64,000 bases of DNA from Ascidiella aspersa (Eukaryota), in the NCBI GenBank assembly GCA_963924565.1, contig OZ004609.1, positions 20,770,001-20,834,000 of the forward strand, written 5' to 3'. Positions 27,452 to 54,555 of the stretch are shown here, one piece after another. The notes under the pieces were generated by a model. The model worked only from the letters and a program-made list of their open reading frames with translations. It was not told where the DNA came from and ran no database searches. Each line of letters starts with the position of its first letter. Position 1 is the stretch's first letter. The position numbers and the translations under genes were made by a program.

Positions 27452-30400
27452 ATGCTTTCCATTAACGCCGCCAACCTGCTGCGCATGTGCGCGCTCGTCA
27501 CCGTGGTCCTGCTGGTGCTGTTCGCGGGAGAATCGCTCGCCAAATCCGGCAAGCGAAGGCGACACCGCCGGCGAAAGGCGCGCCGAGGCGGCAAGGACGG
27601 CAGCGCCGGCGGTGCCAAGGAGCAGCAACTTAACTTTCCCGATCCTCGCTTCGTCGCCGAGCTGAAAAAAGTGCAGATGGCCAAGAAACCGGGAAGGGCC
27701 TCTGCTCGTCCTGCCGTCCCCGCAGCAGCCAAGAATCCCGATTGGACGGAGGCCACGCTCAGGATCCGAGTGCCCGCGGATGACAAAAAGGAGGGCCACC
27801 GAAACAAAAAGGAGGGCCACGGAAAGTTCGGCTACCATTCTCGTATCGGTGACCTTGCCGCGCGTGTCGTGCACGTGGTCGACCCTGGACGCTCATCCCA
27901 CTTCGGATGCGGGCACGAGATTGCCAACGCTCACCAGATTCCCAAGGACGAGCCCTGGATCGCTTTGATCAGCCGCGGCAAGTGCTACTTCTTCAACAAG
28001 ATTAAGCTGGGTGAGCGGTACAACGCCAGCGCCGTGGTGATCTACGATGACAGCGACGGCAAGGTGCAGGTCATGAATGTCGCAGGTGCGTGCCTCACCT
28101 TTGTGTTTTCTATAGTTAGCTTATCCTATGTTCGCTTATAGCCACATGTCGACAGTTCCAGTGTGTGAAGTCTCTCAAGTTTGCAACGCACAAGTATAAT
28201 TATAATTCTCGTAATAGTACGTAATCTTGCCAGAAATGCCAATGTAATCATTACCACTTGGCACGTAGCTATTACGATCGGTGATATTTTTTCATATCTT
28301 GTTGAGAAAACCAATGTGCGATTTTTTCCAAACTACGACTAAAATCAAACCAGCGCGTCATTACGTTACAATATGTAAAAGCACCTTCGTCGAAAATCGT
28401 TTTAAGTAAACGACAACCGCGTTTGAAGTAGTTGTAAAACGGCCCGCGCTGCGCCCACAACAAAGTTAAAAGCTCGACAATAAATTCGTTCAAGAAATAT
28501 GTTGTCTCCGAAGATTTAAACTATATAACATCGTAGCACCTTTGACATGCCGCGGTATTTCGCCTTCATTTTGTTAAGCTGCCAGATTAGTCATGTCGCA
28601 TGTATTTACGGCGAAATGTTACACAGACGAGCACCTGTCAGCGCCAGCAGTGTACAACCCTATACGATACGTGATTCACTGCCTTATGTTCTGGCTTTAT
28701 GGTATCGCGAGTGCTTCGTAAAAGGTTGGCGTCATTCTGTTTATCGACTATCGACGGATAAACATAAATCGGACGTATTTTCGGCTTAATATTTTTTGCT
28801 CGCTGTAAATGGGAATTTAGCTATGGCTTTTTCTAAACACGCGCATAAGGCCCGCCAAGCATAGTTCCATCGGTCATGCAACGTTACGCTTGCTGCCATT
28901 TCACAAACGCGATGGTCCGAACAAAAGTAGGCGCTCACGTTAAATGGAAGCCTTTGTTTTAAGCGCATGAGTTAGGGTACAGCCTCAATCATCTTTGACG
29001 TCGTCGTTCTTGCTCCTCAGAGTTCAAGTATAGTGCGTTGGACGAGCATTAAAATAGAGGACAATATTAATTCGCTTTTCACTTTCTATATTTGGATCTC
29101 GGGTTTCATTGTGACATTGTGTCGGACGGCGTCCGGCTTGTTGATCTAGGGCGTCGCGAGTAAGCTGTAAAAACGCAGAAGGCTTTTAATGTCAAAACAT
29201 CGCCCGATCTTGCTCTTGCCCTGCTACCGACGCCGCCGCTTGTTTGTTCGAATAGGATCGCTTTCGAATGACCTAGCACAAAGCGCTAAGAGAGTCGCCT
29301 CGCACTGGGCTGTCACCCCTCGCTATGTACACAAGCGCGAGTCGACATACTTGGGGCCTAGGGATACCCTGACCGGGGATAGGCTGTCCGTGAAAAATAT
29401 GGACACAGTTCGGCTCGACTGGACCCCTGACTGCCGCAGTGGGCAGCATTGTCACAGCTGGTCCGACGAAAGAGTCCCCGCCTAAAACCTAAAGTTCGGG
29501 GGATTTGGAAGGGTTCGCTGCAGTAGCTTTTCCCTCATTATCCTTATCGCCAACCAAGAGCGTCTGTAAATAAAACCAAGCCGAGTGATGGACGGGCCGA
29601 ACAAGCGCTAGGCCTTTTAAAACAATTAGGGCATTTGTTAAAGATTGTCTTTCATCAACCAGGCCCGGTCAGTCAATCTCTCAACGCTCGTTACATAATT
29701 TTTCGCGGGACTGTAAAAGTATCCCCTTCGCCTAGCCCTAGTGAGTCATCAGCTTTCCCGGGTCATTAGTTAATTTTCATCGCATGTTTCTTTTAAGTAT
29801 GCGAATATAATAAGGCCCAAAATTTAAACAGTGTCAGAAGCTGTACATGTGCGCCAATAAACAAATACTTTCGGCAATGGATTTTCTCCTATGCTGAACT
29901 TCCCCTATATTGAAGAAAACAAAAATAACCTACTCTAAAAGATCGCGCTTCCCGTCCGAAGTAACCCCAGCCGTGAGAGCGCTCTAGCGTTTTTAGGCAC
30001 TCGCGACTTCAAAAGGGCTTATGCACCCTGCGTTGTTGACAAGCGTTCGAATTGGCCATCGACGTGTTACCCCTGGACGCGTGTCAAATTCAAAGCACCC
30101 CCCAAAATTGGCCCTCGACCCCGGTCCCCCGGCCCCATTGTGCCTGCATCGGGACAGACGATGATTATCGCGCGCGCTTTCGCACCTGTATCGAATGTGC
30201 GGGCGAGTTGGGCAAAAGCGACGCTCCATTTGGCGTTGGGCATATTGTTTTGTTTGCCGCCTTTCGCGACAATAGCCTGTTTTGACCAACTTTGGTCGGA
30301 TACGGCGCGGAGGCCGACAGCGGGGCAGGCTCTCACGTTTTGTGTTTTCCAACTGTCGCTTTCCGCGTTGTTGTTGTTCAGCTCGCGATGGCAACGCCAC

Positions 30401-36786: not shown

Positions 36787-39700
36787 ATGCAATTAGAGCG
36801 CGGTTATATAATTTTCAAACTGAGGGCGATGGTAGCAGTATGTTTTGTGCACTGCTGTTTGGCCGTGGGAGAATATCCACAAAGTCACGTAATTACTATA
36901 AGAAATACAATACAGAGAGGTTAGTTGTGCCCCTCGGTATTAAATTGCTTAAAAAAAGCAAATTACTTTCGTAAATAATATCGTAAATTATTTTCTAAAC
37001 ATATGGTCGTGAGTGAATGTGTATTCAAGGCCTTTTTGAATTTTCTAGATTTTTTTATACTCTTATACATATTTTAATTACTTCGCCTTTCACATTTTAT
37101 TTATTTCGAACATGTGCATTTTTTTCACTTCATAACCTCGTTCTTTTTAACTAAGAAATACCTAAACAAATGAATAAAATATAGTTTTAGATGATCGTTA
37201 TTTCGGCGTAGGGCTAAACTAAACATCCCTTTGTTTTAATGCTGTATATGACTATAATGAGCTAATTTAACTAACTCCTATTGCGTCGGTCTTGGAATAT
37301 TTTAGTTTCGGGATCGAACGGCTCGTCATTGAGCGCCAATATCCACAAAGCATATGTCGCCCTCCAGCGGTTCCACGTGACCTCAACCCCTGGACTGGAG
37401 CGCGATTGTTTTGCCGATCGATGCACTTTCGCTTACGTACAAAGCCTGCTGAGCGACGACACTGAAGCAGTAAGTTTGTTTATGACCAAAGAATAACCTT
37501 ATCGTTACCCTGATAATGTAGTATAAAGCACGAAAGGACATTTTTCACATTCGTGATACCACTTACATATACAGTTGCGACAAACGTAAGGGTACACCAA
37601 AAAATTAAAATATGATGTTCATTTTGTTTCCAACTGCTTGCGTTCTCGTGTATTGGCGAAAATCCAACACGGAAGGGTTCCGGCGTGTTTCCATGCCGAA
37701 GCCCCGATAGATGAGCCTGGAATTCGCCGAAGCGGCTCAACGCCATGTCGTTTTGCGACGCATGGTTGATGCGTGCACGGGAGCCGAAATATTCCGACTG
37801 TAATTTCACCCGGATTCGTTTGCGCTCGAGCCAAGCGACGCCGGTGGCAGCGGATTCCGCGCCGGGACTTCACAGCGCCGCCACGCGATCGTTTGACCCC
37901 GTTCGCGATCGGCTCCTCGTCGATTAGGGCAAAACAAACCGGCGAGTGAACAACGGCGCTATTTCGCGTCATTTTGTCGAATGATTTGGCCGCCGCCGAC
38001 CAAGGGTACTTCAGGCTTGCGCGTGGGGTCAAAACATACCGGCGTTGAACTTGCCAATCCACCCCTGTTGGTCGTCGTGTCAATCAAGTGCGTGATGATT
38101 TTCGCTTTATCGTTTTCGAGTAAAATATTCATGATTTGAGATGAATATCATGATTTCAAGATTTTGTTCAGGGTCCTGTTTTCTATCGAGATTAGTTTAC
38201 CTTCAACATTTTTCTTGTTTTTTAGTTATATGTTTAGTACAATCCCACAAAAGTCCTAAATGCAGAAAATGTATGAAGCCCGAACTCGAAAATATGTCAT
38301 GGTTTACGTATTTTTAACTTGTGTTTCGTTAATGGAAAACAAATTTGGAAAAGAAAAAGCTTTTTCCAACTTACCTAATCAAAAACGGAAATCTTTTGTA
38401 AGCAATTCAGTAACTATGAATGATTTATTTAAATGTTCTGCGTTGGTGTACATCAATCCGCCAGTGTTCACCAGGCACTTGCCCTTGTTTTTTTACCGGT
38501 GGAATACCGAACTCCAGGGATTGGGTTACTTTTGCTGAATTGACTTTGTGGTCTACAATGACGCAAGTGGCGCCTGCCAAGTTACGTAATTGTTGTTGCA
38601 CCAAAATGTCGAGGCAGCAAGACAACGAAACGCTGTCAAGGTGCAAGAAAACAAAACGCTATTATAACCGGACCAAAAGTGTAAAAACAATACGATCTGC
38701 GGCTGCGGTGAAATGCGAAAGCATAAACCTAAGCCGTGGGTGAAATATCGCGAAGGGCGCATAACTATGCGCGCTGATGCCGTGTTTTGTAAGTCGACGC
38801 CGACTCCGTGCAAAGGTTGACGCTTGTTTTTCGCGCGCGAAGACCCCGGCCGAAGCGAACCGTGCCGCCCCACCGGGTAACTCTCCACCCACCGTGAAGG
38901 TTAATTAGCGGCTCGGCATCCCGCAACCGACCGGCGCCGCATTGTTTTTGGCGCTGTGCGACCCCGCACCGGTTTCGGCTGCCAAATTCCCCCTTTCGCC
39001 CCAATTTCGGGGCGCCCGTAATCCTCGCCGGCTGTTCGCGGTTTCGTGTTGTTCGTCTTAAAAAGCAGCTTTTCGGCGAGCGGCAATGACCCCGAGGTCG
39101 AGAAGCAGTCACAGGCGAATGAAAGCGTCCCTGGAGAAAGTGTCCAACTAACGGTCGCCGTTCAAGTCGTGACAAGCCATTTATGAACTCTTTTCTGTGC
39201 TGCGCTAGTCACTTTATAAACAAGGCCAGTCTGTACGAGACGACCGTTTCCGCTAAGCGCATATCACCTTTGTTTGGATAGCAATAAATGTTGTTGTTCA
39301 GTATTACTTCGGGTCACTGTGCCGAATATCACCTTGTGCGATAAAACGGCAACATGGTAACACTATGACGAATTTTCTCAGACTTTCTTGTCTCTAGTAA
39401 ATTGAATGAACACACCGCTAGTTGTGCAGCACGGTGTGATTTGTTTGCAGAAGCGCCCCCAAGAAAAGTTCATGCTGCTGCCAATGTTTCAGGCTTAGCT
39501 ACGAACCGGCAAAATTTGTTCGGCGAAATTAACGGGTCCATTTCCCCATCGTAGGCACCTGCTTGTCGGCTGCGCTGTTTGGCAAAGGCAAAAAAAACAA
39601 CCGCGAGAGCATTGCGTTGCAAAATCGGGCCGAACAACTGGTAATGGTGTCCCGGAAGTTGGGCTTTACACGTCGCAGAACGTTGTATGGTGATAAATAG

Positions 39701-42700
39701 TAAAAGAAACCGCATTGATCCTATAGGATTTACGCAATTCGAATAAAAATGAAGCGTATTGTTGAAAATTGTCATTTTTTACAGAAGTTTTTATTTTGCC
39801 TGAACTACAACTCTTATACACAAACTTAGCTTATTTTTGTTTTGTTGACACGGTGTCTTTTTCTTACAGAGTTTGTACTGGAATGTGCTCAACTGCATCA
39901 AACATGACGTGAACTGTGAAGGTGAGCGATGCGGACCTTATAACAATTTAGTCATTTAAAACGTTACATCAAATCCAATACAGAAGTATAGGCAGTATAT
40001 TTAGAACATTTCTATTAGTTCTTTGTTCGTTTTCGTATGGCTTTGATTCTAAATCTAAATACTATATGGCTTGGAAATTAATTTCTAAATCTAACTGCAA
40101 TCTCCAGCCATTATGCTCCAATGGTCATTTAAAGAACTTTTTAAATATTTGAGGTAACTTGTGTATTGTCTGTGTAAAGAGATTAAATGAGCTTTGCATT
40201 TGGATCTTTTTTATGTAAATATTAATTTCATTATTTTTTTCTTCAACAAAACGGTTTGGTTTTGCATTTTTGTTAATGATAAATTAGAACAATTTTATTT
40301 TTTAAGTCTGTTTATTCCACCTATTTTAAAGGCTGTATTGAGACATACGTTCAACATAAATACTCAACACAGTATTATCTTGTGGGTCAAACAAGTCGTT
40401 ACAACCGCCTAAGTTTATTTTCTTTTCGGCAACGTTGAAAAAAAAATGATAAAGTTTTAAGGATAGCGCAAACTGTAGCACAGCGGTTAGCGCGTACGCT
40501 AGCTCGCTTGCTAAACAAAACGAATCCATTGCACCACACACCATGCTCCAAACGAGACTGATGCCCTCGTGCTCTCACACGGTTTGCTACTACACAAACA
40601 AAGGAATGTCCTTTAGGGCAACACAGAACGGTAAAACAATCAGTGATTAGGAGTCGAAACTCAAAAGGCGTAACAAAAGAAACGAAAGACGAAAAGCGCA
40701 GTGAAGCAAAGCAACGCAACGCAAAGTAAAGTAAAGCAAATTAAACAAATAATAATTTACACAACATTACTACAACCTCCAACCATTATGCTCCAAAAAT
40801 AAAGTTTCATTTAACACTCCAACTTAAAGTGTCACGTTATAACCATGCGATAGCAACGAGTAGAGAAGATTCCTTAACGTCAGTTATTGCTTGTTGCGTC
40901 AGACGAGAGCACTTGGGAAGCATGGGAGTCCTGGGGCAACTGTTCAGCCACTTGCGGCGCGGGAGAGCAAGTCCGGTGGCGCGAGTGCGAGCAGGCGAGA
41001 TATTGGGCGCCCAGGTGTCCCGGGGTCTACCAGGAAACACGCAAGTGCGAGATGGACGGACTGCGGTGTATTGGTAAGTCGCTGAAATATTGCTGGTAAT
41101 AATTGTTTTATCAAATTATAATCCACTTTACGCACTTTTAGTCGTTCAAAAAAACTTTCGCGTTAATCGGGTAAATCATTTCTCAAACAAAAAGGCTAAG
41201 TGTAAATACAGTTTTAATTTTTCTGAAGGACTTGATACCATCGGGCCCGCGGCATCATCGTTTTGAATGTTCGTAGGAACTAGGAAGGTCGGGCTGTTAA
41301 TGCTCGAAAAAAACACTTAAAAACACCACAACAAATGCTTGAAAATACTACTTGTTGTACGCGAGCAACAATTTTTTAAAAGTTTGCAAAAAGCACTCAA
41401 AACTAATATTGTTGCTGCTGCAGTAAGTTATACTATCCCCTTTATTTAAATAAATATAAAGATTTCAGTAAATGCTTTTTGTTTAACAAAGTGGTACGCC
41501 GCTAAGTTCAAAGACGCTATCGGTGGTATTCTGCCAATAAGTTTTGTGAACACCTGCACCAAAATTATCGTAAGTGGAATTCGTAAACTCACGTTTGTAC
41601 CGAACATGCTGGTGCAACATCTTAACCGATGTTTAAACCTCGCGGAAGGTGGATCACACTCTTTTGACGGTTGCTGCTAGAATAACTGATGCACACCAGC
41701 TAGTATAAGCATTCACGTTCCTGCGGTCGGCATTTGCCGGCACAAATGAGCCGCCGTTCGTCAACAAAAGGCCGACGTTTTAATCTCGACCACCCGAGCT
41801 TCGCGACCGCACGCGTCACGTACAAGCGTCGCTTTGCCCGAACTGCAGCGCGCATAAAAAGCACCCGAGAAAGGAGGAATTCGTTCGGAATGACAAGTTT
41901 ATTCATTTTTATCCCAAAAATAACGTATGACTTTTGGTCTCCGTTCTTTGTTGTATGAAATTCAACCGTTTACATTTATTTTTCATGTAACTGAAAACTG
42001 AAAAACAATCCATTTGGCGTTTCATTTCATAACAGTAAAAATAAAGCGTTTAATCACCATTACTGCTGTACAAAATTTAACTGTTTCTATTTATTTTACA
42101 TCTAAGTGAAAACTCCAATCCATATGGAGTCTCATTTCATAATAGTAAAAACAAGGTAGCCGATAAGTTTGAACCGGTAGCAAATGTCAGGGCAGAGCGT
42201 CGCATAGTTTGCGCACCCCTGCTTTACTGGGTGTAGCAGTTCTTTGATTGATCTCACTTTAAGCTTCCTCGACACGAAGGCTTGCCGACTTCTGAGCGTT
42301 TTAGCCGGTGACGCGCACCCTTGTCGTAAGTGAGCAATCCGCGGAACTTTGCGGTAATCCTAAAATAGCAGTGGAATGACTGTGGGCATTCCTGCTGATC
42401 CGTGGCAAAGCCTTCTCCTGAAACAACCACCTACTATTTGAAACTATATCTGTTTTGTGGTTTTCTTGTTTTTTTATTTCGAAAAAAGTTTTTCTTTTAT
42501 TTGTCAAATCAACTAAGGTTAAATTACTAACATGGATTTATAAAAAAATAATCCATTTGCCGATAGAAGTTTTTCTAACATCGTGTAAACGTGTCGAATA
42601 AATTCAGCCACTTCTTATGTAAGGCATTTTTTCTGATGTATATAGCCCCTATTCAGCTTTCACCTTTGCCTTAGAACAACCCGAGGCCAAGCCGGACGAG

Positions 42701-45700
42701 TGGGGCCCGTGGAACCCATGGAGCCAGTGTGACGTCACTTGCGGCAGAACGGGCGTGGTGACGAGGACCCGGGTTTGCCTCCCCTACGACGCCCCGTGGT
42801 ACTGCGTGGGGGAAAAGTCCCAGAGTCGCGGCTGTACACAGATTCCACCATGCCCCGGTAAATTAAAAGTTTAGAAACAACTCCACCCTTTAAATTTTTT
42901 TTCATTGAAATCCACACACTTACTTTTGTGGTACATTTTGCCGGTTCAAATGTCACACGATGATTGCCGTTGCCAAAACGTTAAAAGTCTATAAATTAAA
43001 AAAAATATATAACGCCATATTAACGCACGTCGTACATGTTTTTTTTGAAAGTTCACTATCAAACTTAATTGTTGGCGTATTTGTTTGAAATAAAAGCTGA
43101 GTTTTAGGTGGCACTGTTGCCATATTTTATTTATATTTTTTTGACAAGCTTTTGTGCAATGTGTTTTATTTGTCACCTTAAATTGATATAAAACGATGGC
43201 AAGAAATCTTGTCAGTGCCACCTAAATCTCAGTTTTCGATTCAGACAAATTCGCTAATCAAACGAGTTTAATAGGGCTAACTTTAATATAGTGAAACAAG
43301 TTAATATAGCAAAAATGTCTCGTATAGTGAACGGCGCCTGGCAGTTCTGGACGATTTGGAGCCCGTGCCTTGTGAAGACTTGCGGAAGTGGGGTGAGAAA
43401 GCGCACAAGGGCCTGCTCGCACCCTGTTGGCCTTGGCAAGAAGTGCGTCGGCGCTTCGTCCGAATACGTAGCCTGTCGCAGCATTACACCGTGCAAAGGT
43501 CAATTGATGCCTCGAATGCTTACATCTGGATCAGACAGAGCCTCTTAAAGGCTTTTTTCCTTAGTTATACGACAATTTGGTTCCTCATTCTCATTTTCGC
43601 CCTTTAATTAACGAACAATAATTATTAGAAGTAAAGGTATACAGCGTCTGACAATTCAAAGTGTAAAATATTTTAAATGTTACTACCTTGATAATTAATT
43701 TTCGTTTTTTTCGGCTCGTCCAATGCTTACACGACCCAGGTGACCATTGACAGCCAACAGAGTCCTTACCTTCAACATGGTTTTTTAACTTCATTTTATT
43801 TCGATATGCATAATCAATTTTTGCCAAAAATGTAAAGCCTTCTTTTCCTAGGAGTCAATAAAATCCACCCGAAAGTTATATCTGTATTCAAAATGCTAGT
43901 TACAATCGCAGTGTTGCAGGCTAACAAACTTTGAAACTACTGAATCCATAACCGATAACCAGTACATAGTTTATACCTTTCTACCTCAAACAAACCACTA
44001 ATACGGTCTTTTATTTATGTTCTTACCGCAGAAGACCACTTCACCACCATCAACCACTTCTCCGAGCACAGCTCACTGCTTTTCAGGGAGCAACCTCCCT
44101 CCTCCTTCCTCCATGTCTTCCTTCGCTCCCGGCCACTCTTGGCCGCCGGAACCGTTTTCCGCTACGTGGGGAACCCCCGGGGCTTCGCGGCGCAAAGCAA
44201 GTCACCCACCAACGTTCGTGTGGCAAAGGGTCCGACCAGACCAAAAATGGCGGCGGGCGCGACGAGCAAAACGAAAACTGCCGAAAAGCACAAATCCGAG
44301 TTTATCCGCATCTCATTGGCCGAAAGTGGTCACGTGATGGTCCACGCTTCCATTAACGGCTCGGACGAAGTCGTCATGGAAGTCGGCCAAACCCTGGTGA
44401 GATATTCAATTCAAGTTACCCGCAACCATGTCCCTGTGATTTACTTGCGGATGTTGTTCTCTTGAAATGTATTTAATGAAAATTCCACATGCTTTAAACG
44501 TCATTATTTGTTGGTATACATATTGCTTCACCTATTATTAAATGATACCACTCTCTAAACAAAAATCCTGGTTCCGCCCTTATGCAAAGTCAGTTGAGTT
44601 TAGGTATTTTTAAATTGTCAAAATGAAATGTTTTGAGGAATCTATAGTTATAACGCGGCTGTTTAAGAACGCGTGAGGTTTGACTTCAGAAAATTGACAT
44701 GCTTTCGATCCCGCTTTAGTTAACATAAACGGCCCCAAACACTGCGAGTGCTTAGAACCAGGACCATTTTTTGCACTTTATGCGGCTTCATTGTGTCAAC
44801 CTGCGATTTAGGTGACACGACCGATAAGATAGTAAAAATAGAGTTTTATCAGTGTAAAAATAGGTTTAAATTAAAAAAAACAACTTTGGCAGGTTGGCCA
44901 CTGGAACAACATCCGCGTCACGGTGGTGAGTGACGTGCTGCTTGTGCGACTCAACGACGGGCAGAACATGGGTTCGGCCCTCCACGCCACCGCAGGGGAC
45001 GCCCCGGGCACCAAACCGACCGGTGCCGCTCCGGCCAAATCGTCCTGGTGGACCGGCTTGTGGGGTTACGTAGACGAAATGAGCAAATTGAGCGGTGACT
45101 CAATCGGGAACCTGATCAAGGGCAACCGGGCCGTTCTGGCTTCGTTTAAGGGCTTTGTGGGCCTGGGCAAGGTCGCGAAGGGAGACGTGAGCTTTAGGGG
45201 TGAGGCGTTTCTGTTGTATTGTAACAGTGTTGGGTATACAGTTTACAACAGCAATGGGAACGAGTCACAAGAGTGTAAGCGAGTTATCCAAACTCCATTC
45301 GACAAATAGTTTTTTTGTTTTATTAATTAAAAAAACATTTCTAATTTTACTCTGTATAAATGCTATTAAGTTTTAAGTAAAATTCCTTTTAGATAAAAAT
45401 ATTAAAAAAAAAACTCGCGATTCCTGGCGAAATTTTTCGCAACGTAATACGACTCAACATAAAATCCCAGTTCTTGCGCCGAACCTGAGAATTCCGTTTA
45501 CCTCTTTAGATTTAAGACTTTATACGGCCGGCAACAATACACCACGTGAAACAGTTTAATCGCTTTGGCAAATACGACAGAATGCTGCACTACCGTCCAT
45601 TTTTAAATTGCATTCAACACTGCCGCAATGTTTACACTCCGAAAAGGTTACGTGTCGGAGCTGCAAGTCAACTTCAAACGCTTCGGTTTGGACAAGAAGA

Positions 45701-48700
45701 AACCCAACGAGTTGAAGACACTGTGGGACCCGATACAAAGTCGTGGGGTTGCGCGCGTCCCCACCAAGGACATGCACGGACACGAGGAAGTGAAGTTGCG
45801 ATATTTCGACTCTCATCAGCGGTAAGTTACGTTTTCTTGTTGATATTGCGTTAACTATTACTGAGAGAAATTTAACGGCAGATAGCTTTACACAACAGTT
45901 CAATTTCGGTTTTGTGGTTTCAATTTGGAATCGCTGGTATCACAGACCAGTAATCGTTTGCATCCAAGACATGCGTCTCTCGTTACAGGACGCTTTGTTA
46001 CCAAGTCGGAATTTAAAAACTCAATAACCTGAAACCTATATTTTACACTAGAAAAAGTTATCAACCAAAAAAATTACGCAAATTCGATATAACCTTTACT
46101 TTAGTACATCGAAAGCCATCACAGAATAACTGAATCAGGCTCAGGGAAGCGAGTCGCGAAACAACCATACGTCAATGCTTGCTAGATCACAGTTGTTGAA
46201 GACACATGTGTGTTTATCTGTCATATCCTTTAGTTCATATGTTTTCCTGTGAGTTTAAGACACGTTCCCAATGATAATTACTTTGTCAGCAATCGATGGC
46301 CAACAATAAATTCTTCCCCTATGCAGAGTCCATCTACCGTTCACAATGAAGTGGTGGAATTTTGAGCGGGTTTCTCGTCTGAGAGATTACCATAACACAA
46401 GTGACATCAAACCCTATGACGTAGCAACCTTAGAGATTACGTTTAAACCGACTCGAGCTGACGGGATTTTAGTATGGAATAGAGGTGTTACTATTGATGT
46501 TAATTGATTAAATTCTGTGTAAATTAGAAATAATTTTTTTGAAGATTTAAGTTATTAACTTTAATGAAACTTAATGACAATGGTTCGAAGATGATATGTT
46601 TGTCTTTTCTCGGTGATGGGATGTGATACTAAAAAAACAAAATGAAACGGACAATACAATTCCAATACATGTATTGTACCTTGAGGTTTGAAATTTTCGA
46701 ACTGCCAATAAATTCCAATAACTTTACCAGCTAAGCACGACCTTTCCAGCCACATGAAGCTTACCGTGGAGGACGGGACAAGGATAAAGTTCACCTTGGC
46801 CCAAGGAGGTCAGATTAAAACTCTGGACAGCGACGATAATGTCAAGCTCCGGCACTGGAACAAATTGACTCTGCAAATGTTAAGGTACTTTTAAAGTTTT
46901 CCAAAAAAGCAGTTAATGTTGTGTTATTCACCAGTGTTGTAATGACGTAAGTCAGCGACTTGACAAATGACTTTACTTGACTTAAGTCTTTTGGGCAGAA
47001 TGACTTGGGTTAAAATGAAGTGTTTTCCTTTAGAAAAAAACATAAGGAAAAATATAGTTTTTTGTATTTTTTAGTTTAGTTATTGTTTCGTACGATTTTA
47101 ATTCCAATTGTTAAATGTTTCTTTTTATGACAAGGGCGTGACTTGAAATTGAATTACTCAAATTATGACTTGACCTGGACTTAACTTGGGCAACTGATGA
47201 CTTGGACTGTGACTTGACTTGTTATTTATTTTAAAAGACTTGACTTTGACTCAAGTTGTTTTACAAATGACTTGACTGGGACTTAAGTCGTTTTAAAATG
47301 GCTTATTTACAACACTACGATTCACACTTATATCTCTTATGCGACACGAGGTTTTGAATTAACCTGGATGACAGTGATGAGGCGAGATACCTGATATATG
47401 TGCAATTGATTTACAGGGAAGGAATGGTTCGGATGAAGGTAAACGACGGCGAAGTGGTGCAACTGTACATTCCTCCTGTTACCAGGGAAACCTTGCCCGG
47501 CGACATCCTCCTAGTAGGGGGCGCAGAAAAGGTATAGCTCGGCACTCGCGGTCATTATGGCTTAATTCGAGACAAGGTGTTGTGCACCTTTTGTGTTGAG
47601 CTGTAGTTTCAGGGCGAACGACGAGATGACACTATCACAAGTCTTTGGTTTTGTTTTACCATGCCTAACCTTTTTTATGATTCCTATCTAGTAAATTATT
47701 CGGGGAGTGCTAAATTGACTTTAACTTGAAACTATGCCCATCTGTCTACTATAAATATCATAACCTAAAATTAAAGCAAACTACGTTCCGACTAAAAGTT
47801 TGTATTTGTTTACGCTGCTGTGTCAATGAATAGACACCAAATATTTCTCTCTGTTTATCATAAATCCACGAATCTATGCAAATAACGTCATCTTTCGTTT
47901 GTGCTAACCGTGGCTGGCAAAACTCTAACTCACTTGACGCAGAACATTTTTGAGTCGCCGGACATGAAAGCGCCAAAAGGCCCAACAGCGCGCCACAACG
48001 ACGGCTTCCACGGCTACATCTTCAGCTTAAAGCAGAGCTCTGCTGAACAAATGCACGACCACAACTTGCACCTCAACTTGCACGGGATGCCGCCGTCGGA
48101 TTTGTTCAACGATCCAGGTGTGATTTGATTTACGTTTTTGCATCGGTTAAACCTAGGTATTCATATCTTTTTTTACACTTTACTAAATAATGACAAAATT
48201 CACTAGTTATCTTATATTTGCTTCTGAAAAGCTAAGCAGCAGTTCATTGCCTACATCAATTCACTTCAACCACAGAGCTAACTTCAACAGCTTTGTCAAT
48301 TAGTTATACTTTAAAACGGGGCTGCGGAGTCCGTTAAAAATAACCCGAGTCCGACTCCTGCCAAAGAAATAAACCCAAGTCCGACTCCCGAGTCCGACCC
48401 TGACTGTACAGCCTGTATTTCGCCAATTTACTAAGTAAACACTGTGGATATTCAGCAATCCACCTATTTTGGGTGTAGAGTGGTAATTCGTTCACTCACA
48501 ATACATAGTTGGAAAATATTCCACCATATGCTATTCAAACTTTACCATTTACAGTTGGCGGCCACATCAGTTTTGAAATTTGCTAGTGCGCATGCGCATG
48601 TCGGACTCAGGACTCGGGTAGTTTTATGTGGTCTTACTCGAGTCCCGATTCCGAATACAACAAAAAAACGACTCCTCGAATTTGGCGGGGTCATGACTAG

Positions 48701-51700
48701 ATCCGTCCCTGGAAATAGTGTTTCTGATACAACCGAACATGTAGAAACTCGTCCTTGTTTTCGCTTAGCCTATGTATTTTAAGGAAAATAAGCCGCGGGC
48801 CGGATTAAATTGCTTGGCTGACCGTATGTTGCCCAGGTCCGCGTAAGAAACAAATAAGTTTTTTTGCTGTTGTTGGTTGTAGTTTACTGGAAACACTGGT
48901 ATTTTAAACCGGTCAAAGAAAGTGGGGATGTCGAACCGGAAGCGGAAAGCGGGGCCACAATCCAGGTAAAGAGGGAACTCGTTTGCCCCCTCCCTGTACC
49001 CCCTGACGTCACCAGCATGCCCAACGTCACCTGGTACAAAGACGCCGTTCCTGTAAGTCTCCCAAATAATTCGAGGCCAACTTTAATTAACATTGCGGAC
49101 AAAAACGTCTCAAAAAATGTTCGTTTGAGTCCATGATAATTTATACTTAATAAGTAAAGATTTCAGCATTTTCATAGATTTTCACTTCAGTTTGTTTGTG
49201 ACAACTGTGTTGTAGTTATCCGATATATTCAGCCTATTCAGTGTTTAGTTTTTTATAGCTTGAAACTAACAGCCTTGGTTATCTGGCTAAGTATCCCCAT
49301 TTTGTGAAGTAGTCGAGTTAATATATATTATCGGAAATTTTGCGTTTTTGAAAATATGTATTGTAATTAGTTTTTCTAAAGTTTATAAAAATGAATTAAT
49401 AAATTTGCCTCTATAATGCACGTTATTACTCGTCATCACGAATAGCAGACATTTGGTGGCTAATGAAAGTGCGATCTAAATTTATTACCCCAAAATAACT
49501 TAACAGAAGATTACCATTCGCCTAATTAATTGTTATTTGTTAATAGATTAAAAAGAGTTCTCTCTTTGGCTTAAAAACGGAAGTTAGTGCTGCTCTAGTA
49601 CAATTCCGTCTCAGTTTACTGCCGACCAGCGACGGGTCTAAGAAGCAATCCGGAGTATATTCGTGTCTCGTCGAAGACGAATACACGCATTGGCTACTGG
49701 CAAATCACGTGGTAGAAGTCATCAACCAGGGTAAGTGTATCAGTCCGGGTAGCTCTAAAACCAGTTTCAAAATTCGTAATTATAATGAAACTAAAACAGT
49801 TCTCTATTCTTGTTTCCTAGATGGCCTGCTTCAAAATGATCTCGACTTTTGATATTTATAATGTCCTAAAACTAAATGGGATGATAGCTTCAACGATTAC
49901 CCACTCAACCGGCATTATAGCAAACGTTTGGCATTTGTGTACAGTTTTATCCGGGGCAAGAGTTATGTTATTTTTTAGGGAGGCAACACAGCTTAAGGCA
50001 TGCAAATTATTGCACCGTCTTATAACTTAAATTACCTATACCTTTATAGATTTTTCGCATTGCCAATCTAATAGAAGTTGTTTATTCGAAGTTCTAAACT
50101 GCCGACAGCCACTATGCCTTAAGCATCAATGAACTGCGTTTAGATTTATTCCTAGTATATTTACGTATATTCACCTATTGTATTTAATGGTAGCAGAAAC
50201 AATGTAGCCTGTTTTTTTAAACGTGGAAGACACGTGTTGTAGTACAGGGGTTACCCAACCGCCGCTCGTCACAAAGTTTTACGCGGCTTTTATTAAGTTT
50301 GACAGCGTAATGGCATTTCTTGAGACGTCCTGCAGCGTGAATAAAATTCTTTTAAATCTACCCCAATATGGTTAGTATACAACATCTAATAAATCTAGCT
50401 GAGCAAAGGTATTTGTGTAAGTGTGAAAGAAACGGCAAAATTCATTTCCGCCCATATGTAAGGCACAGCTCTTTTGTTAACCAAGTAAAAAAAATATATT
50501 TTGTTAAATTCTTTAAGTGTGGTGGGTTTTTGCGTATCTCCAAACCAAGCTTTTTGAACGTCGTGAACTGCCTTGGAAGTTTTTTCAACTACACTCAAAT
50601 GCGGCAATTGCACCTTTTTCAGATATGTTTGAAGTTGGCATGATGGCAGGCGTTGTGAACTACATCAGCACCAAGGCTGGAGTATCAAAGATGACTGCCA
50701 TATATATCGCCCTCGGTTCGGTAGCGGGTGTTTGCCTCTTTGTCATGTCTATTTGCAGCGCAATAAACTGGTAAGTTTGTGGCCTACGTTGCCTATTCAT
50801 GCGAACCGTCTTTAAATTATATCCGGTGTCGCGTTGTTTTTGTTTTGTTCGTAAATATTGCTGGATGGCCGATGCTTGACACTTTAATCCGACACCGACC
50901 CCGGATCTTTTGAACAAAAAGTATCGAGCTCCGATCCAATACCATTGAAGTTTTTGCTATGCTCAAAAATTTTTTCCAGTTAATTACGTTAATATTTGCT
51001 TGTTGCTGCATTAGATAGCAATCCAACTTCAAAATACCTATATTAATTTGATATCGGATCCAATCCCACTGCAATATCGGAAGAGTACCGATACTACCAC
51101 TTGGCATTGGGTATCGACTCTCAGATATTATCGGACATTCCTACTGGTGGCAAAATACAATAAACCTTATTATTTGTCAATTATTTTGATATATTTAATA
51201 AAAAGAAAATGTGTGAAAACTGGTCACACCGTGTTGATTTTGGAAAAAAGTCTTTATTTAAATATTTTCTGGCTATTGTCATGTAACATGGTAATTGTGG
51301 GCTTTAAAATGGAGATGACAAATGCAACTTATTTCATTATAGTTCGATTTACCTAGGGTGTCTAATTACGATTTTTCGGAAACGTTTTTTTTTCAATTTA
51401 AAATAACTAATGCTATAAATTATTCTAGGGTTTAGTACATTATTATAAAATGTAAAATTTGTGGATTTCAGGTACAATTACAAAATGGCGAAATCGAAGA
51501 AAAACAAAAGAAAAAAACATAAGAACAAAGAATATCAAAAGTTATTAAAGAATACACAAGACGAAAACACTACAGGCCATCATAGTTTACGGTAGATTTA
51601 AAATATAAATTGCTTAAAAAATATATTTATGGCATCTCAACTGTGTTCTAATTTTTTTATATATAAGTCTGACATTTGGATATTTGCTTGAGGTACATTT

Positions 51701-54555
51701 GTTCAAGCTTATTTTAAATTGTAATCAACGAAATATTTTCATATGTTGGCCCTGTTTGTTCAAAACTATTACGATGGTGATTTATTAACGACTTGTGAAA
51801 TGTATAAGATCAACATGTATTCGTTATGTTTTGTTTTATCCTTGACATGAAAAAGCTCATTAAATAGACTCAAATGGTAAGCAGATTTTCACCGCTACAT
51901 TTGAGATAGTGGCATTATGTAAGTTGAAGTCCTAAAAAAAACGTTTAAAAAATATACATAACGGAAGTTTTAAAAAATATTAAAGGATTTATCTCTATCA
52001 ATTTCAACAGGTGATTGATTTAACAAGGTGTCGGTTTAAACTAAAAATAAAATATATAGAAATATCAGAGGATCGTTTTCTTTACTTTTCAAGTAACAAA
52101 AAAATTCCGTCGAGGGATAGAGACGAAGAAAAGGACAAGTATTCGTCCAGTAAGAAACACAAGCACGGAGAACGTAAATCGTACGAAGCAAGACTTAATG
52201 GAGACAAGCACAGGCACAGGCAGCACCGCGTCCACGGACACCGCAGTAGGTTGGTATGGGTAGGCAATTCATTTTACAATTGTGATTTATTTTCATCGAG
52301 CGTAGGGTAAACACAGATTACCAGCAACCTTGGGACATTTTTTGCTTCGTTGTCTAACAAATGCCAGAAACAGCTAGAAAATTAAAACAATGCCAAACGC
52401 ACCTATAGCAGTTTTGCGTCAACATTCTTTGGGAAACCGGATAAATAAAAAAAGTGTATGTTACGAACTCTTTATAGTAGTCGTAAAAAACACTTTGTGT
52501 TCTTTCGCATTCTTACAGTCCCAGTAAATAATAAAAAATCTCTGCTCTTTTGGTAAATCGACCGCTCCTTGACATCATTTGTTTAAATTTAAGCCATCGT
52601 GTCCAATCATTATGTTCCATACCGTCAAAGGCTACGTGCTTTCACTTTTAGTTAAACAGAACAGTGCACAAGTAGTAGAAAATAAAATTGATTGTGTACT
52701 GGTTGCCAGCAAGGCCTTCTCAATGTTTCCTTCGTGACCCCCTCGTAAACTCCCCATATCCCCCAAGGTAAGCTCTATACAAAGTTTTAACACCCTTTCT
52801 TATGCTATCCCAAATAATATATTGCGAATTCCGTTCTAGGTGGCTTCCAAAAACATTGTTGGTTCAGTTTAAAATTGGACAAAATGTGAATTTATTAGAG
52901 CGAAACACCCTATACTCAGTTGGTAGAGCTACGATCCCCGTATGGCCGGAGGTCGTGAGTTCGAACCTTACTGCAGGCTCGACTGATTCGGTTAGTCTGT
53001 GATGGTTTCCGGTGCACTATGATACGTAAGCCGTTATCTTTTTTCAAAAGCGACTTTGGAAGGGCTAGATCACAGTTGTTGTACACGCGTGTGTGTCAGT
53101 TTTGATTTTGTACTGCGTCTCTTTCCAAACATGCGTAAATACAATGCCTTATTTGCACTTGTGGCGATAGCCACAAACGGGCAGCTGAAGAAGCACCGTT
53201 GCTCGAGACAAACGTCACAGCAGAGGAGGCAATGCCGTCAAACGAACTTTCCCCGCGGCGGATGTCGAGTGTGGTTCCTGGCCAGAGAAGAAGATCGAAC
53301 CCGTTTAGCAGAAGTGTTTCTCATAAAAAGAGCGGCACTGGCAGCGGGTCCGGAACATCGCGAAGTAGAGACATGAAGTTGGCTCCTAGGGAGAGGTAAG
53401 TTTGTTGGTTGAATTGGTGTGGCTTGACTTCAATACGTCTCTTAGAGTTCATTTTACAAAAAATTGACAATGTTTTACAAAAAAAAATGATGCTTAATGA
53501 AACAATTTGTTTTTGAATTTTAACTAATAGTGTCGTAGTAGTGTCAATAGACATAGAGTAGCAGAATTGAAAAAGAGCAGTGTTGACTCGATATAGTCTT
53601 TTGGGCAAATGACTTAACTTGACTAAGTCTTTTAGACAAATGACTTGGGTTGGAATAAGTGTTTTCATTAGGCAATTTTTCGTAAAATTGGGTTATTTAT
53701 CCTAATTTTTGAACATAAAACAATTTGATGGCCCTCTTGTGCCTTTTTGGTATTTTTTAGTTAAGGTATTGCTCATATTCGGACGAGTTTACCCAATTTT
53801 AATAGCTTAACGTTTAATTTCTATGACAAGGACTTGACTTGAAATTGACTTGCTTTAATCATGACTTCACTTGGACAGTTATATTACAAATGACTTAACT
53901 GAGACTTAATTCATTTCGAAATGACTTGTTTACAACACTTAACAGAAGTATAAATACCACCTTTGAATGTTCTGAACAAATTTATTAATTTTAACATCTT
54001 GTTAAACACATTCTTCCTACTTGTGACGTTGGTTTTTCCTTCTACAGATCTTGATTTATTCCACTGTTTTAAACAACTACATTATGGAGTTAGCTGCACA
54101 AGCGTGGCATAGCTCATTAAAACCATTCTATCGAAGAGAAAGCTGAGTGCAGCTAAATGCATTATACACACAGACACATGCCTGTAATCTATTAGGCGTT
54201 AGCAGCCGCAAGTCCAACAAGACCGGGTGTTTTCAACCCCTTTCTCGGTCCGTCAATATATCAGTTAATTAGATCAATATATCAGTAAAAATTAGAAACA
54301 AAAAAACTTTCTTTAAGCCTTCGTTTGGCCTTTGCAGACCTGACCATTTGAGGTTATTTTTAGCAAATATAGGTGCAACGCAGTTTTGTTGTACAAAAGG
54401 AATGCTTGTTCAGGTCTTCGCAACCTGGCCCGAGTAGCGGCTTCATGGCGCGCTTATTGGGACTCCACCACTCATCCGACGAATCCTTTCTCTCATGTGG
54501 TTCATCAGACGAACCAGACGAAGTGGACTTGTACGAAGATCGATTGTTCGCATGA
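36787..54555 (+). CDS. Type I membrane protein: signal peptide, degenerate Gla-like domain, 3x TSP1, 2x laminin G, Ig, TM, basic cytoplasmic tail; 20 exons, about 1155 aa
   Basis: Phase-consistent GT-AG exons: 36787-36919, 37306-37469, 39870-39921, 40903-41073, 42675-42857, 43328-43498, 44032-44396, 44893-45199, 45647-45821, 46327-46484, 46731-46884, 47417-47531, 47943-48117, 48883-49052, 49547-49730, 50623-50770, 51472-51591, 52094-52249, 53171-53395, 54414-54555 (3468 nt). Three TSP1 WxxWxxWxxC...TCG...RxRxC repeats on phase 1-1 exons. LamG motifs LHVFLRSRPLLAAG / GHWNNIRV / FRGYVSELQVN and LEITFKPTRADGILVW / RHWNKLTL / LLVGG / GFHGYIFSL. Ig motifs LVC...VTWYKD...SGVYSCLV. TM IYIALGSVAGVCLFVMSICSAI. 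Confidence 0.85.
41960..42160. repeat. Degenerate about 110-bp tandem duplication (intronic)
   Basis: AATCCATTTGGCGTTTCATTTCATAACAGTAAAAATAA at about 42007 versus AATCCATATGGAGTCTCATTTCATAATAGTAAAAACAA at about 42117. Confidence 0.6.
46932..47317. mobile_element. hAT-like MITE rich in GACTT repeats (copy 1)
   Basis: Ends CAGTGTTGTAA / TTACAACACTA; flanks TTATTCAC / CGATTCAC (6/8); many GACTTG units; homologous to 53578-53940. Confidence 0.75.
48317..48711. mobile_element. hAT-like MITE with GAGTC/GACTC repeats (older copy)
   Basis: Starts CGGGGCTGCGGAGTC; internal sequence collinear with 56519-56891 (shared GTTGGAAAATATTCCACCATATGCTATT). Confidence 0.75.
50860..51143. mobile_element. Degenerate MITE with CCGATA/TATCGG repeats
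   Basis: Ends GGATGGCCGAT / ATCGGACATTCCTA; repeated CCGATA-like units. Confidence 0.5.
52905..53040 (+). mobile_element. tRNA-derived SINE fragment
   Basis: A box-like TACTCAGTTGGTAGAGC and B box GAGTTCGAACC (52957-52967) at tRNA spacing, with no acceptor or anticodon stems; followed by a non-tRNA body. Confidence 0.6.
53578..53940. mobile_element. hAT-like MITE rich in GACTT repeats (copy 2)
   Basis: CAGTGTTG ... TTTACAACACT ends; collinear with 46932-47317. Confidence 0.7.

What the first reader, a model, noticed from the sequence alone, without database searches (positions are those of the whole stretch)
36787..39921. A Gla domain that has lost its glutamates (pseudo-Gla)
Seen: exons 2-3 encode SLSANIHKAYVALQRFHVTSTPGLERDCFADRCTFAYVQSLLSDDTEA|SLYWNVLNCIKHDVNC. 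This aligns with the Gla consensus GxLERECxEExCxxEEAREVFExxxxT|xxFWxxY. Retained: LERxC-x4-C, the aromatic stack, a following disulfide loop, propeptide spacing A(-10)/L(-6)/R(-4) and the classic Gla intron pattern (phase 1 before the propeptide, phase 0 before the aromatic-stack mini-exon). Lost: all but two Glu, the FLEEL omega loop and the R(-1) cleavage site. Known: ascidians have vitamin K-dependent Gla proteins, and Gla residues mediate Ca2+/phosphatidylserine binding. Inference: a carboxylation-independent Gla fold repurposed for protein interaction or as a decoy.
Basis: partly seen in the sequence, partly recalled or inferred. Interest (0 to 1): 0.8.

Follow-up and report, generated by a model that had tools for sequence, protein, structure and literature searches.

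The report
Glutamate-less Gla-like domain, conserved in ascidians
The first domain of a conserved sea-squirt membrane protein descends from the vitamin K-dependent, calcium-binding Gla domain of clotting factors but has lost almost all the glutamates that make such a domain work, so it is an old and still-conserved "pseudo-Gla" domain.

Summary
Exons 37306-37469 and 39870-39921 exist, and stranded RNA-seq shows them spliced together.

They are the 5' part of a roughly 18 kb gene. It encodes a signal peptide, the Gla-like domain, three TSP1 repeats, two laminin-G domains, an Ig domain and a membrane anchor.

No single-sequence test recognises a Gla domain: Pfam, a model of this genome's own Gla exons, and the protein-language search all fail. 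Three other lines support common descent:
- **Exon structure.** The exons match this genome's true Gla genes. The main exon runs from phase 1 to phase 0 and ends exactly 15 residues after the second Cys. A mini-exon follows with Trp at its fourth residue, running from phase 0 to phase 1.
- **Motif rarity.** The motif hydrophobic-E-R-[DE]-C-x4-C-[ST]-aromatic occurs twice in 308 Mb: here and in a true Gla exon.
- **Orthologue profile.** I found orthologues in Ciona, Clavelina and a metagenome tunicate contig. A profile of the four sequences hits only Gla domains at the top of the PDB (best E 0.006).

All four orthologues are Glu-poor and lack the cleavage site, so the loss is ancient and the domain is under constraint. 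Function is inferred, not shown. Fold prediction on exon 2 alone was uninformative.

The parts
36787..36919 (+). Exon 1: start codon and signal-peptide-like hydrophobic stretch (MVAVCFVHCCLAVG). Ends in phase 1 (gag|gttagt).
   Evidence: Sequence and translation. RNA depth is about 2x on the right strand, but no exon 1-2 joint was listed. Orthologues have an equivalent signal-peptide exon. A PA-domain gene lies upstream here as in Ciona, so this is the 5' end of the gene.
37306..37469 (+). Exon 2 (164 nt, phase 1 to 0): a conserved amphipathic helix (A-Y-x-A-L-Q-R-F-H) followed by the Gla-like core G-L-E-R-D-C-F-A-D-R-C-T-F-A-Y-V-Q-S-L-L-S-D-D-T-E-A.
   Evidence: RNA depth about 10-12x. The donor lies 15 residues after Cys2 in phase 0, as in all canonical Gla exons of this genome. 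The length equals that of canonical exon L001. PDB and hhalign profile hits to Gla.
39870..39921 (+). Exon 3 (52 nt, phase 0 to 1): aromatic-stack equivalent S-L-Y-W-N-V-L-N plus an extra C-x6-C loop (CIKHDVNC).
   Evidence: Spliced to exon 2 in RNA-seq, GT..AG, 3 reads. It is exactly 52 nt in all four orthologues. Canonical mini-exons of this genome are 25 nt (DEYWRRYI, QTFWLKYK), with Trp at residue 4 and the same phases.
40903..41073 (+). Exon 4: TSP1 repeat 1 (phase 1-1), in frame with exon 3 (g|ac gives Asp).
   Evidence: Pfam TSP_1 E 2.1e-10; boundaries; colinear with the orthologues.
42675..42857 (+). Exon 5: TSP1 repeat 2 (phase 1-1).
   Evidence: Pfam TSP_1 E 2.9e-9; boundaries; tblastn.
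43328..43498 (+). Exon 6: TSP1 repeat 3 (phase 1-1).
   Evidence: Pfam TSP_1 E 6e-11; boundaries; tblastn.
44032..48143 (+). Exons for two laminin-G domains. Approximate pieces: 44032-44396, about 44893-45225, 45643-45822, 46325-46486, 46739-46885, 47394-47531, 47940-48143.
   Evidence: Colinear tblastn matches to the Ciona and Clavelina orthologues. Pfam Laminin_G_2 and Laminin_G_1 on the full-length orthologues. Exon 7 (44034-44396) retrieved the orthologues.
48888..50771 (+). Ig-like domain exons (about 48888-49124 and 49547-49762) and the transmembrane exon (about 50637-50771, AIYIALGSVAGVCLFVMSICSAINW).
   Evidence: tblastn; weak Pfam Ig_2; translation.
54373..54552 (+). Open frame holding the probable last coding exon (acceptor not mapped): acidic cytoplasmic tail ending ...DEPDEVDLYEDRLFA.
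   Evidence: By eye only. It matches the C-termini ...DVDDVDLYEDTIYM (Ciona P0126) and ...DEVDLYDVTAM (Clavelina P0004). No RNA evidence.

Best explanation
Exons 2 and 3 encode the N-terminal domain of a conserved ascidian type-I membrane protein: signal peptide, pseudo-Gla, three TSP1 repeats, two laminin-G domains, one Ig domain, a membrane anchor and a short acidic tail.

The domain derives from the two-exon Gla module (propeptide plus Gla exon, then the aromatic-stack mini-exon).

It has kept the parts of a Gla domain that do not need calcium:
- the L-E-R-x-C-x4-C disulfide loop;
- the hydrophobic face of the following helix (F, V, L, L);
- the Y-W aromatic stack.

It has lost what makes a Gla domain vitamin K-dependent:
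- 9 of the 10 alignable carboxylated glutamates;
- the F-L-E-E-L omega loop;
- the carboxylase-recognition consensus;
- the dibasic propeptide cleavage site.

It has gained a conserved uncleaved N-terminal helix and an extra C-x6-C loop.

Shown here: the splice, the architecture, the conservation in at least three divergent ascidian lineages, and the specific similarity to Gla.

Inferred: it folds without calcium or carboxylation and serves as the membrane-distal structural or protein-binding head of the receptor, not as a phosphatidylserine or calcium binder.
For: - **Splice and expression:**
- **Exon structure matches true Gla genes of the same genome:** phase 1 start, phase 0 end 15 residues after Cys2, and a next mini-exon with an aromatic residue and Trp at residues 3-4 that ends in phase 1. 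The same structure is present in Ciona, Clavelina and a metagenome tunicate.
- **Motif rarity:** the core motif occurs twice in 308.6 Mb, here and in the Gla-RTK-like Gla exon, and 0 times in the control.
- **Single-sequence PDB search:** phmmer of exon 2 against 177,635 PDB sequences returns one hit at E<=10. It is the Gla domain of TMG2, in register.
- **Orthologue-profile PDB search:** the best 16 hits are all Gla domains (factor IX, protein C, TMG2, factor X, factor VII), with E 0.0063 to 0.68. The first unrelated hit is at E 0.74.
- **hhalign against 11 canonical Gla exons of this genome:** P 2e-4, 30 columns, correct register.
- **Weak Pfam hit:** the Clavelina orthologue has a Pfam Gla hit at the right place (E 0.97, profile positions 5-38 of 41).
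- **Constraint:** the domain is 42-45% identical between orthologues, like the TSP1 and LamG exons. L, E and both Cys are invariant.
- **Carboxylation system present:** the genome has a carboxylase gene and at least 8 canonical Gla exons, so the loss is specific to this gene.
Against: - Pfam finds no Gla in exon 2 even at E<=10.
- An HMM of this genome's own Gla exons gives exon 2 only 4.1 bits, rank 5 of 1623 window ORFs.
- The protein-language search found nothing.
- The best profile E-values (0.006; P 2e-4) are modest and rest on about 25-30 columns.
- AlphaFold models of exon 2 alone are of low confidence (pLDDT 64 and 69). They gave no Gla match by Foldseek or VIA-align.
- No functional or biochemical data exist.
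- The exon 1-2 and exon 3-4 joints were not seen in the reads, and depth on the TSP1 exon was low. The tool warns that such dips are no finding.
Confidence: 0.75

Rival explanations
1. Chance or convergent resemblance. The N-terminal domain would be an unrelated small helical disulfide domain that happens to share L-E-R-x-C-x4-C and a Y-W pair with Gla domains.
For: Single-sequence profile tests fail. The profile E-values are modest. There is no fold-level confirmation.
Against: Three intron positions and phases coincide with those of true Gla genes in the same genome. The motif is otherwise found only in a true Gla exon across 308.6 Mb. The 16 best PDB hits all come from one family, in one register. 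The domain sits directly after the signal peptide, as Gla domains do.
Confidence: 0.1
2. It is still part of the vitamin K system. The uncleaved helix, with invariant Ala and Leu four residues apart (like propeptide positions -10 and -6), would dock on the gamma-glutamyl carboxylase. The one invariant Glu (L-E-R) would then be carboxylated, or the protein would act as a non-substrate binder or decoy of the enzyme.
For: A15, L19 and E31 are invariant in four orthologues. The carboxylase gene is present. This genome has canonical short Gla domains with Cys1 only 7-11 residues after the cleavage site, so the shifted register is not absurd.
Against: No statistical alignment reaches the propeptide region, even against PDB chains that contain propeptide plus Gla. 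The -16 aromatic residue, the A-S-x-F-L core seen in every canonical propeptide of this genome, and the K-R site are all absent. One Gla residue cannot build the calcium network.
Confidence: 0.08
3. Proto-Gla. The domain would be a surviving non-carboxylated ancestor of the Gla fold, not a degenerate descendant.
For: Nothing direct. The tested data do not root the relationship.
Against: Full-length relatives were found only in tunicates. Canonical Gla modules with the same exon structure coexist in the same genome and occur in vertebrates. The extra 27 nt in exon 3 and the missing cleavage site look derived.
Confidence: 0.03

Closest known systems
Canonical vitamin K-dependent Gla domain (Pfam PF00594; factor IX, factor X, factor VII, protein C, TMG/PRGP proteins)
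   Same: It is N-terminal, directly after the signal peptide. It has a two-exon module with identical phases and intron positions. It has L-E-R-x-C-x4-C-[ST]-aromatic, hydrophobic helix positions equivalent to factor IX F25/A28/V31/F32, and an aromatic residue plus Trp at the start of the mini-exon.
   Different: Only 1 of 10 alignable carboxylation positions is Glu here (1-2 in the orthologues). There is no F-L-E-E-L omega loop, no dibasic cleavage site and no A-S-x-F-L propeptide core. The mini-exon is 27 nt longer and adds a C-x6-C loop. The domain scores below the Pfam threshold.
Ascidian Gla proteins (Ci-Gla1 to Ci-Gla4 of Ciona; Gla-RTK of Halocynthia; Kulman et al. 2006 PNAS, PMC1635082). 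Cited from memory: the paper was not held.
   Same: Same animal group. The Gla module is joined to non-coagulation domains. This genome has a Gla-RTK-like gene (Gla exon, membrane anchor, tyrosine-kinase motif) and several Gla-EGF genes.
   Different: Those proteins have Glu-rich domains with propeptides. This gene (Ciona LOC100180507, annotated as uncharacterized) is, as far as I recall, not among them, and its domain has no carboxylation apparatus.
Gas6 / protein S (Gla, four EGF domains, two laminin-G domains)
   Same: A Gla-type head followed by small cysteine-rich repeats and a pair of laminin-G domains.
   Different: It has TSP1 repeats in place of EGF domains, and an added Ig domain, membrane anchor and cytoplasmic tail. 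No sequence evidence links its LamG pair specifically to Gas6 or protein S: a PDB search with the Ciona protein returned only TSP1 proteins.
Calcium-free (apo) Gla domain of factor IX (PDB 1CFH), where the C-terminal helices stay folded and the N-terminal part is disordered (established knowledge, not tested here)
   Same: The retained region corresponds to the calcium-independent part. 1CFH is the best PDB hit of the orthologue profile.
   Different: Here the calcium-dependent part is replaced by a conserved helix instead of being disordered (AlphaFold secondary structure only, low confidence).

Membership tests
Gla domain (Pfam PF00594) | Score over the Pfam gathering threshold (27 bits) | tested here: not met
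   Exon 2 gives no hit at E<=10. It is not among the 20 scored genome matches. The Clavelina orthologue scores 10.1 bits (E 0.97) at the right place. The Ciona orthologue has no hit.
Gla domain (Pfam PF00594) | 9-12 glutamates at the carboxylation positions | tested here: not met
   In the gap-free register, the window sequence has Glu at 1 of 10 alignable positions (the Gla-15 equivalent). Clavelina has 2, Ciona 2 and the metagenome tunicate 1. Canonical exon L001 has 8 of 9.
Gla domain (Pfam PF00594) | Propeptide with a carboxylase recognition site, and a dibasic cleavage site | tested here: not met
   All 11 canonical exons of this genome have A-S/N-x-F-[LIF]...R, and 10 of the 11 end in K-R or N-R. 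The four pseudo-Gla sequences have neither. Only the A-x3-L-x-[RKQ] spacing is kept.
Gla domain (Pfam PF00594) | L-E-R-E-C-x4-C disulfide loop followed by [ST]-aromatic and an amphipathic helix | tested here: met
   The sequence is G-L-E-R-D-C-F-A-D-R-C-T-F-A-Y-V-Q-S-L-L. L, E and both Cys are invariant in the orthologues. The DNA pattern is found only here and in one true Gla exon genome-wide.
Gla domain (Pfam PF00594) | Gene structure: a phase 1 to 0 exon ending 15 residues after Cys2, then an aromatic-stack mini-exon running from phase 0 to 1 | tested here: met
   Compared with the canonical Gla genes of the same genome and conserved in four orthologues. The mini-exon is 52 nt instead of 25 nt.
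Gla domain (Pfam PF00594) | Detectable profile-level homology to known Gla domains | tested here: met
   The orthologue profile against PDB sequences gives 16 best hits that are all Gla domains, best E 0.0063. hhalign against the genome's own Gla exons gives P 2e-4, probability 47%. The support is moderate.
Gla domain (Pfam PF00594) | Gla fold (three short helices around the disulfide, plus the aromatic-stack helix) | tested here: inconclusive
   The AlphaFold model of exon 2 with a four-sequence alignment has pLDDT 69. Its helices at residues 30-35 and 41-53 agree with factor IX helices in position. Foldseek gave no match and VIA-align gave only generic helical matches with Z<=4.6. The joined exon 2+3 domain was not folded.
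Gla domain (Pfam PF00594) | Gamma-carboxylation and calcium- or phosphatidylserine-dependent membrane binding | not testable with these tools
   This needs mass spectrometry and binding assays.
Thrombospondin type 1 repeat (PF00090) | Score over the Pfam threshold (21.6 bits) | tested here: met
   Three exons score 41.1, 37.4 and 42.8 bits.
Laminin G (PF02210 / PF00054) | Score over the Pfam threshold | tested here: inconclusive
   The window's split exons give no hit. The colinear full-length orthologues score 38.7 and 34.8 bits for Laminin_G_2 (cut-off 22.9). Their first LamG is below the cut-off.

The most novel reading that the evidence does not exclude
The pseudo-Gla head would not be a mere relic. 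Its uncleaved helix, with invariant Ala and Leu at the spacing of propeptide positions -10 and -6, would still dock on the gamma-glutamyl carboxylase in the endoplasmic reticulum. The protein would then be a membrane-anchored pseudo-substrate or regulator of vitamin K-dependent carboxylation, or a single-site substrate at the invariant Glu of L-E-R.
Probability: 0.07. Interest if true: 0.8.

Novelty: new variant of a known kind. Interest (0 to 1): 0.55.

Why it matters
Gla domains are defined by their carboxylated glutamates and the calcium they bind. Here the scaffold has been kept under constraint in at least three divergent ascidian lineages after nearly all of those residues were lost.

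This suggests that the disulfide-helix core and the aromatic stack can have a role of their own, structural or in protein binding, independent of vitamin K and calcium. That idea can be tested.

It also gives a natural contrast for studying what the glutamates contribute to Gla folding.

It annotates the unrecognised N-terminal domain of an uncharacterized but conserved tunicate receptor (Ciona LOC100180507). It also illustrates shuffling of the Gla exon module onto a TSP1-LamG-Ig membrane protein.

I found no description of such a domain in the searchable literature. That library is incomplete.

Tried and rejected
**Searches with exon 2 alone that found nothing useful**
- Pfam: no hit.
- Protein-language atlas: no usable hit.
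- Word search: no candidates.
- Own genome: only the exon itself, so no paralogue.
- HMM of the 17 own-genome Gla exons: 4.1 bits, not significant.

**Structure**
- AlphaFold on exon 2 as a single sequence predicted a helix plus a beta hairpin at pLDDT 64. I rejected it as unreliable.
- With a four-sequence alignment the model was helical at pLDDT 69.
- Foldseek against the PDB found nothing. VIA-align wide gave only generic helical matches, Z<=4.6. No conclusion is drawn from these.
The whole-domain fold test is therefore missing.

**Relatives**
- A word search with the N-terminal region of the Clavelina orthologue found only itself.
- A PDB search with the full Ciona protein returned only TSP1 proteins, so a link of the LamG pair to Gas6 or protein S could not be tested.

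**Literature**
- Kulman et al. 2006 is not held.
- Searches for pseudo-Gla, Gla-like domain and LOC100180507 gave nothing relevant.

**Chance-level propeptide-like matches**
- Window 4983-5078 (-), E 0.02.
- Intron 2, 38665-38904 (-), E 0.8.
- Neither is followed by a Gla-like sequence, so I treat both as chance.

**Other points**
- I considered whether a different upstream exon feeds exon 2. The upstream gene is a separate PA-domain gene, syntenic with Ciona, so I kept exon 1.
- I considered read-through past 39921, which would give a short protein ending 13 codons later. The 52-nt limit of the split reads and the conserved colinear orthologues argue against it.

Full report
**1. What is in the sequence**

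- Exon 1 (36787-36919) starts with Met. It carries a hydrophobic signal-like stretch and ends in phase 1.
- Exon 2 (37306-37469) is 164 nt and runs from phase 1 to phase 0.
- Exon 3 (39870-39921) is 52 nt and runs from phase 0 to phase 1.

A stranded RNA-seq run of the same species (X3) covers exon 2 at about 10-12x. It shows the joint 37469->39870 (GT..AG) in three reads. The short side of that joint is 52 nt, the full length of exon 3.

The exon 1-2 joint was not listed. Exon 1 has only about 2x depth, so exon 1 is plausible but unconfirmed. Depth on the next exon was low, but the tool warns that dips on conserved exons are no finding.

All RNA reads, and a DNA run, carry A instead of G at 37311 (Gly to Arg). 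This lies in the unconserved linker.

**2. The gene**

Exon 3 joins in frame to a TSP1 exon (40903-41073). Two more TSP1 exons follow (42675-42857 and 43328-43498). All three are phase 1-1 and all pass the Pfam threshold.

A search of 1.84 billion representative proteins with the next exon (44034-44396) found three relatives. One is a full-length Ciona intestinalis protein: LOC100180507, XP_078481926.1, 947 aa, annotated as uncharacterized. A word search with that protein added a Clavelina lepadiformis protein of 986 aa.

Both proteins align colinearly with the window from exon 2 (37341) to a transmembrane exon (50771). On the full-length orthologues Pfam finds three TSP1 repeats, two laminin-G domains and a weak Ig domain.

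The upstream neighbour is a PA-domain gene both here (27416-28138) and in Ciona. The loci are therefore syntenic, and the Gla-like domain is the true N-terminal domain.

Outside tunicates, the hits cover only the TSP1 part, about 10-34% of the query.

**3. Is the N-terminal domain related to Gla?**

Tests with the single sequence say nothing:
- Pfam gives no hit at E<=10.
- The exon is not among the genome's Gla matches.
- An HMM built from 17 Gla exons of this genome gives it 4.1 bits, rank 5 of 1623 window ORFs.
- The protein-language search is blank.

Three independent lines support common descent.

(a) Gene structure. This genome has at least eight canonical Gla exons over the Pfam cut-off, and a carboxylase gene.
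- In every canonical exon, the donor lies in phase 0, 15 (sometimes 16) residues after the second Cys. In the three whose acceptor I read (L001, L003, L004), the exon starts in phase 1 just before the propeptide.
- Where I looked, the next exon is a 25-nt mini-exon (DEYWRRYI, QTFWLKYK) running from phase 0 to phase 1.
- Exon 2 has the same phases. Its donor is exactly 15 residues after Cys2. It has the same length as canonical exon L001.
- Exon 3 has Tyr-Trp at residues 3-4 and the same phases. It is 27 nt longer, and the extra codons add a C-x6-C loop.
- The Ciona, Clavelina and metagenome-tunicate (L035) genes have the same structure, with exon 3 exactly 52 nt in all four.

(b) Motif rarity. 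The DNA pattern for hydrophobic-E-R-[DE]-C-x4-C-[ST]-[F/Y/W class] occurs twice in the 308.6 Mb genome. One copy is here. The other is in the Gla exon of a Gla-RTK-like gene. The reversed control gives none.

(c) Profiles.
- phmmer of exon 2 against all PDB sequences returns a single hit at E<=10. It is the Gla domain of TMG2, in register (E 1.9).
- A profile of the four orthologous exon-2 peptides (A1) gives 16 best hits that are all Gla domains: factor IX, protein C, TMG2, factor X and factor VII. E runs from 0.0063 to 0.68, always aligning L-E-R-x-C with L-E-R-E-C. The first unrelated protein comes at E 0.74.
- hhalign of A1 against 11 canonical Gla exons of this genome (A2) gives P 2e-4 over 30 columns in the same register.
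- The Clavelina protein has a sub-threshold Pfam Gla hit at the right place.

I put the probability of common descent at about 0.85-0.9.

**4. What was kept and what was lost**

Kept (invariant or conservative in four orthologues):
- L-E-[RQ]-x-C-[FY]-x3-C-x-[FY];
- the hydrophobic helix positions equivalent to factor IX F25, A28, V31 and F32;
- Y-W-x-[VL]-L.

Lost:
- Of the ten alignable carboxylation positions, only the Gla-15 equivalent is Glu here. The orthologues have one or two. A canonical exon of this genome has eight of nine.
- The F-L-E-E-L omega loop.
- The A-S-x-F-L propeptide core.
- The basic cleavage site, in all four orthologues.

Gained:
- A conserved helix, A-[YH]-x-[AST]-L-[QL]-[RKQ]-[FIY]-[HR].
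- The C-x6-C loop.

No statistical alignment reaches that region, even against PDB chains that contain propeptide plus Gla.

The Glu loss is shared by Ciona (Phlebobranchia), Clavelina (Aplousobranchia), this genome and L035, so it predates their divergence. The domain is 42-45% identical between orthologues, like the rest of the protein. It is therefore under constraint.

**5. Structure**

AlphaFold on exon 2 alone was of low confidence. With the four-sequence alignment, the model (pLDDT 69) has three helices: residues 5-25, 30-35 (L-E-R-D-C-F) and 41-53. The last two lie where factor IX has helices. Fold searches gave only generic helical matches.

**6. How it most likely works**

The retained part corresponds to the calcium-independent helical core of a Gla domain. 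The calcium- and membrane-binding part is gone.

The most likely reading is a constitutively folded, vitamin K-independent head at the membrane-distal tip of an adhesion- or receptor-type protein, acting structurally or as a protein-binding surface. This is inference.

Rival readings, with my confidence in each:
- convergence (0.10);
- residual interaction with the carboxylase, or single-site carboxylation (0.08);
- an ancestral proto-Gla (0.03).

**7. Novelty**

The Ciona gene is annotated as uncharacterized. No Pfam domain is assigned to its first 100 or so residues. Literature searches found no description of a glutamate-less Gla domain.

Kulman et al. 2006, on the Ciona Gla proteins, could not be read. 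I cite it from memory.

I class this as a new variant of a known kind. It is of moderate interest for the evolution and folding of Gla domains.

Noticed in passing
window 27416-28138 (+): A large open exon encodes a signal/TM stretch, a basic region and a protease-associated (PA) domain-like sequence. It is a separate upstream gene. The Ciona orthologous locus also has a PA-domain gene directly upstream, so synteny is conserved.
   Followed up: partly
window 59904-61702 (+): Two long overlapping ORFs have reverse-transcriptase-like sequence, suggesting a retrotransposon downstream of the gene.
   Followed up: no
window 40751-40798 (also 40076-40122, 40534-40552): A short dispersed repeat (core CCAACCATTATGCTCCAAA) lies in intron 3. 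It has extreme word depth in the DNA run (about 135,000) and hundreds of partly matching RNA reads on both strands. The reads also show an opposite-strand joint between 39968 and 40767.
   Followed up: partly
window 37311: G in the assembly reads as A in all 12 RNA reads and in the DNA run X1. This changes Gly to Arg at the second full codon of exon 2, in the unconserved linker.
   Followed up: no
G000:C2:8683241-8796176 (L007, L008, L013-L017) and G000:C2:7143567-7200678 (L005, L009-L011): Two clusters of near-identical short Gla exons. Each has a full propeptide and only 7-11 residues (14 in L010) between the cleavage site and the first Cys (for example ...KKR|ATIESECYEEVCSWEEVKECEGDTQQA). 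These look like tandem expansions of a short Gla family.
   Followed up: no
G000:C1:33009898-33009990 (L019, L026): A second, less extreme Glu-poor Gla-like exon (Pfam E 4.35). It has an intact-looking propeptide (VFLGKEQASAFLKRSRPK) and is followed by an array of EGF exons. It may be an intermediate stage of Gla degeneration.
   Followed up: partly
G000:C9:11712500-11731499 (L002, L029, L024): A canonical Gla exon is followed by a transmembrane exon and by exons with a tyrosine-kinase motif (DFGLSRD...YYK...PLKWMPPES). This looks like a Gla-RTK-like gene, as described for ascidians.
   Followed up: partly
G000:C3:708265-710873 (-) (L037, L038): Five colinear exon matches to the HTTM domain of the vitamin K-dependent gamma-glutamyl carboxylase. 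The carboxylation enzyme is encoded in this genome.
   Followed up: partly
window 54373-54552 (+); P0126 and P0004 C-termini: A conserved acidic C-terminal motif, [DE]-V-D-L-Y-[ED], sits at the end of the cytoplasmic tail in this genome, Ciona and Clavelina. It could be a sorting or phosphotyrosine signal.
   Followed up: no
window 38665-38904 (-) and 4983-5078 (-): Two short minus-strand open frames have Gla-propeptide-like strings (GVFAREKQASTFARSRRR; AVVLNRRSASTFLP). They score at chance level (E 0.8 and 0.02 within the window) and no Gla-like sequence follows them.
   Followed up: partly
L035 / L036 (JGI metagenome samples 3300001913 and 3300001463): Contigs of 43-52 kb in two metagenome samples carry a tunicate orthologue of this gene: exon 2, exon 3 and the LamG exon. 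Host ascidian DNA is therefore present in those metagenomes.
   Followed up: partly
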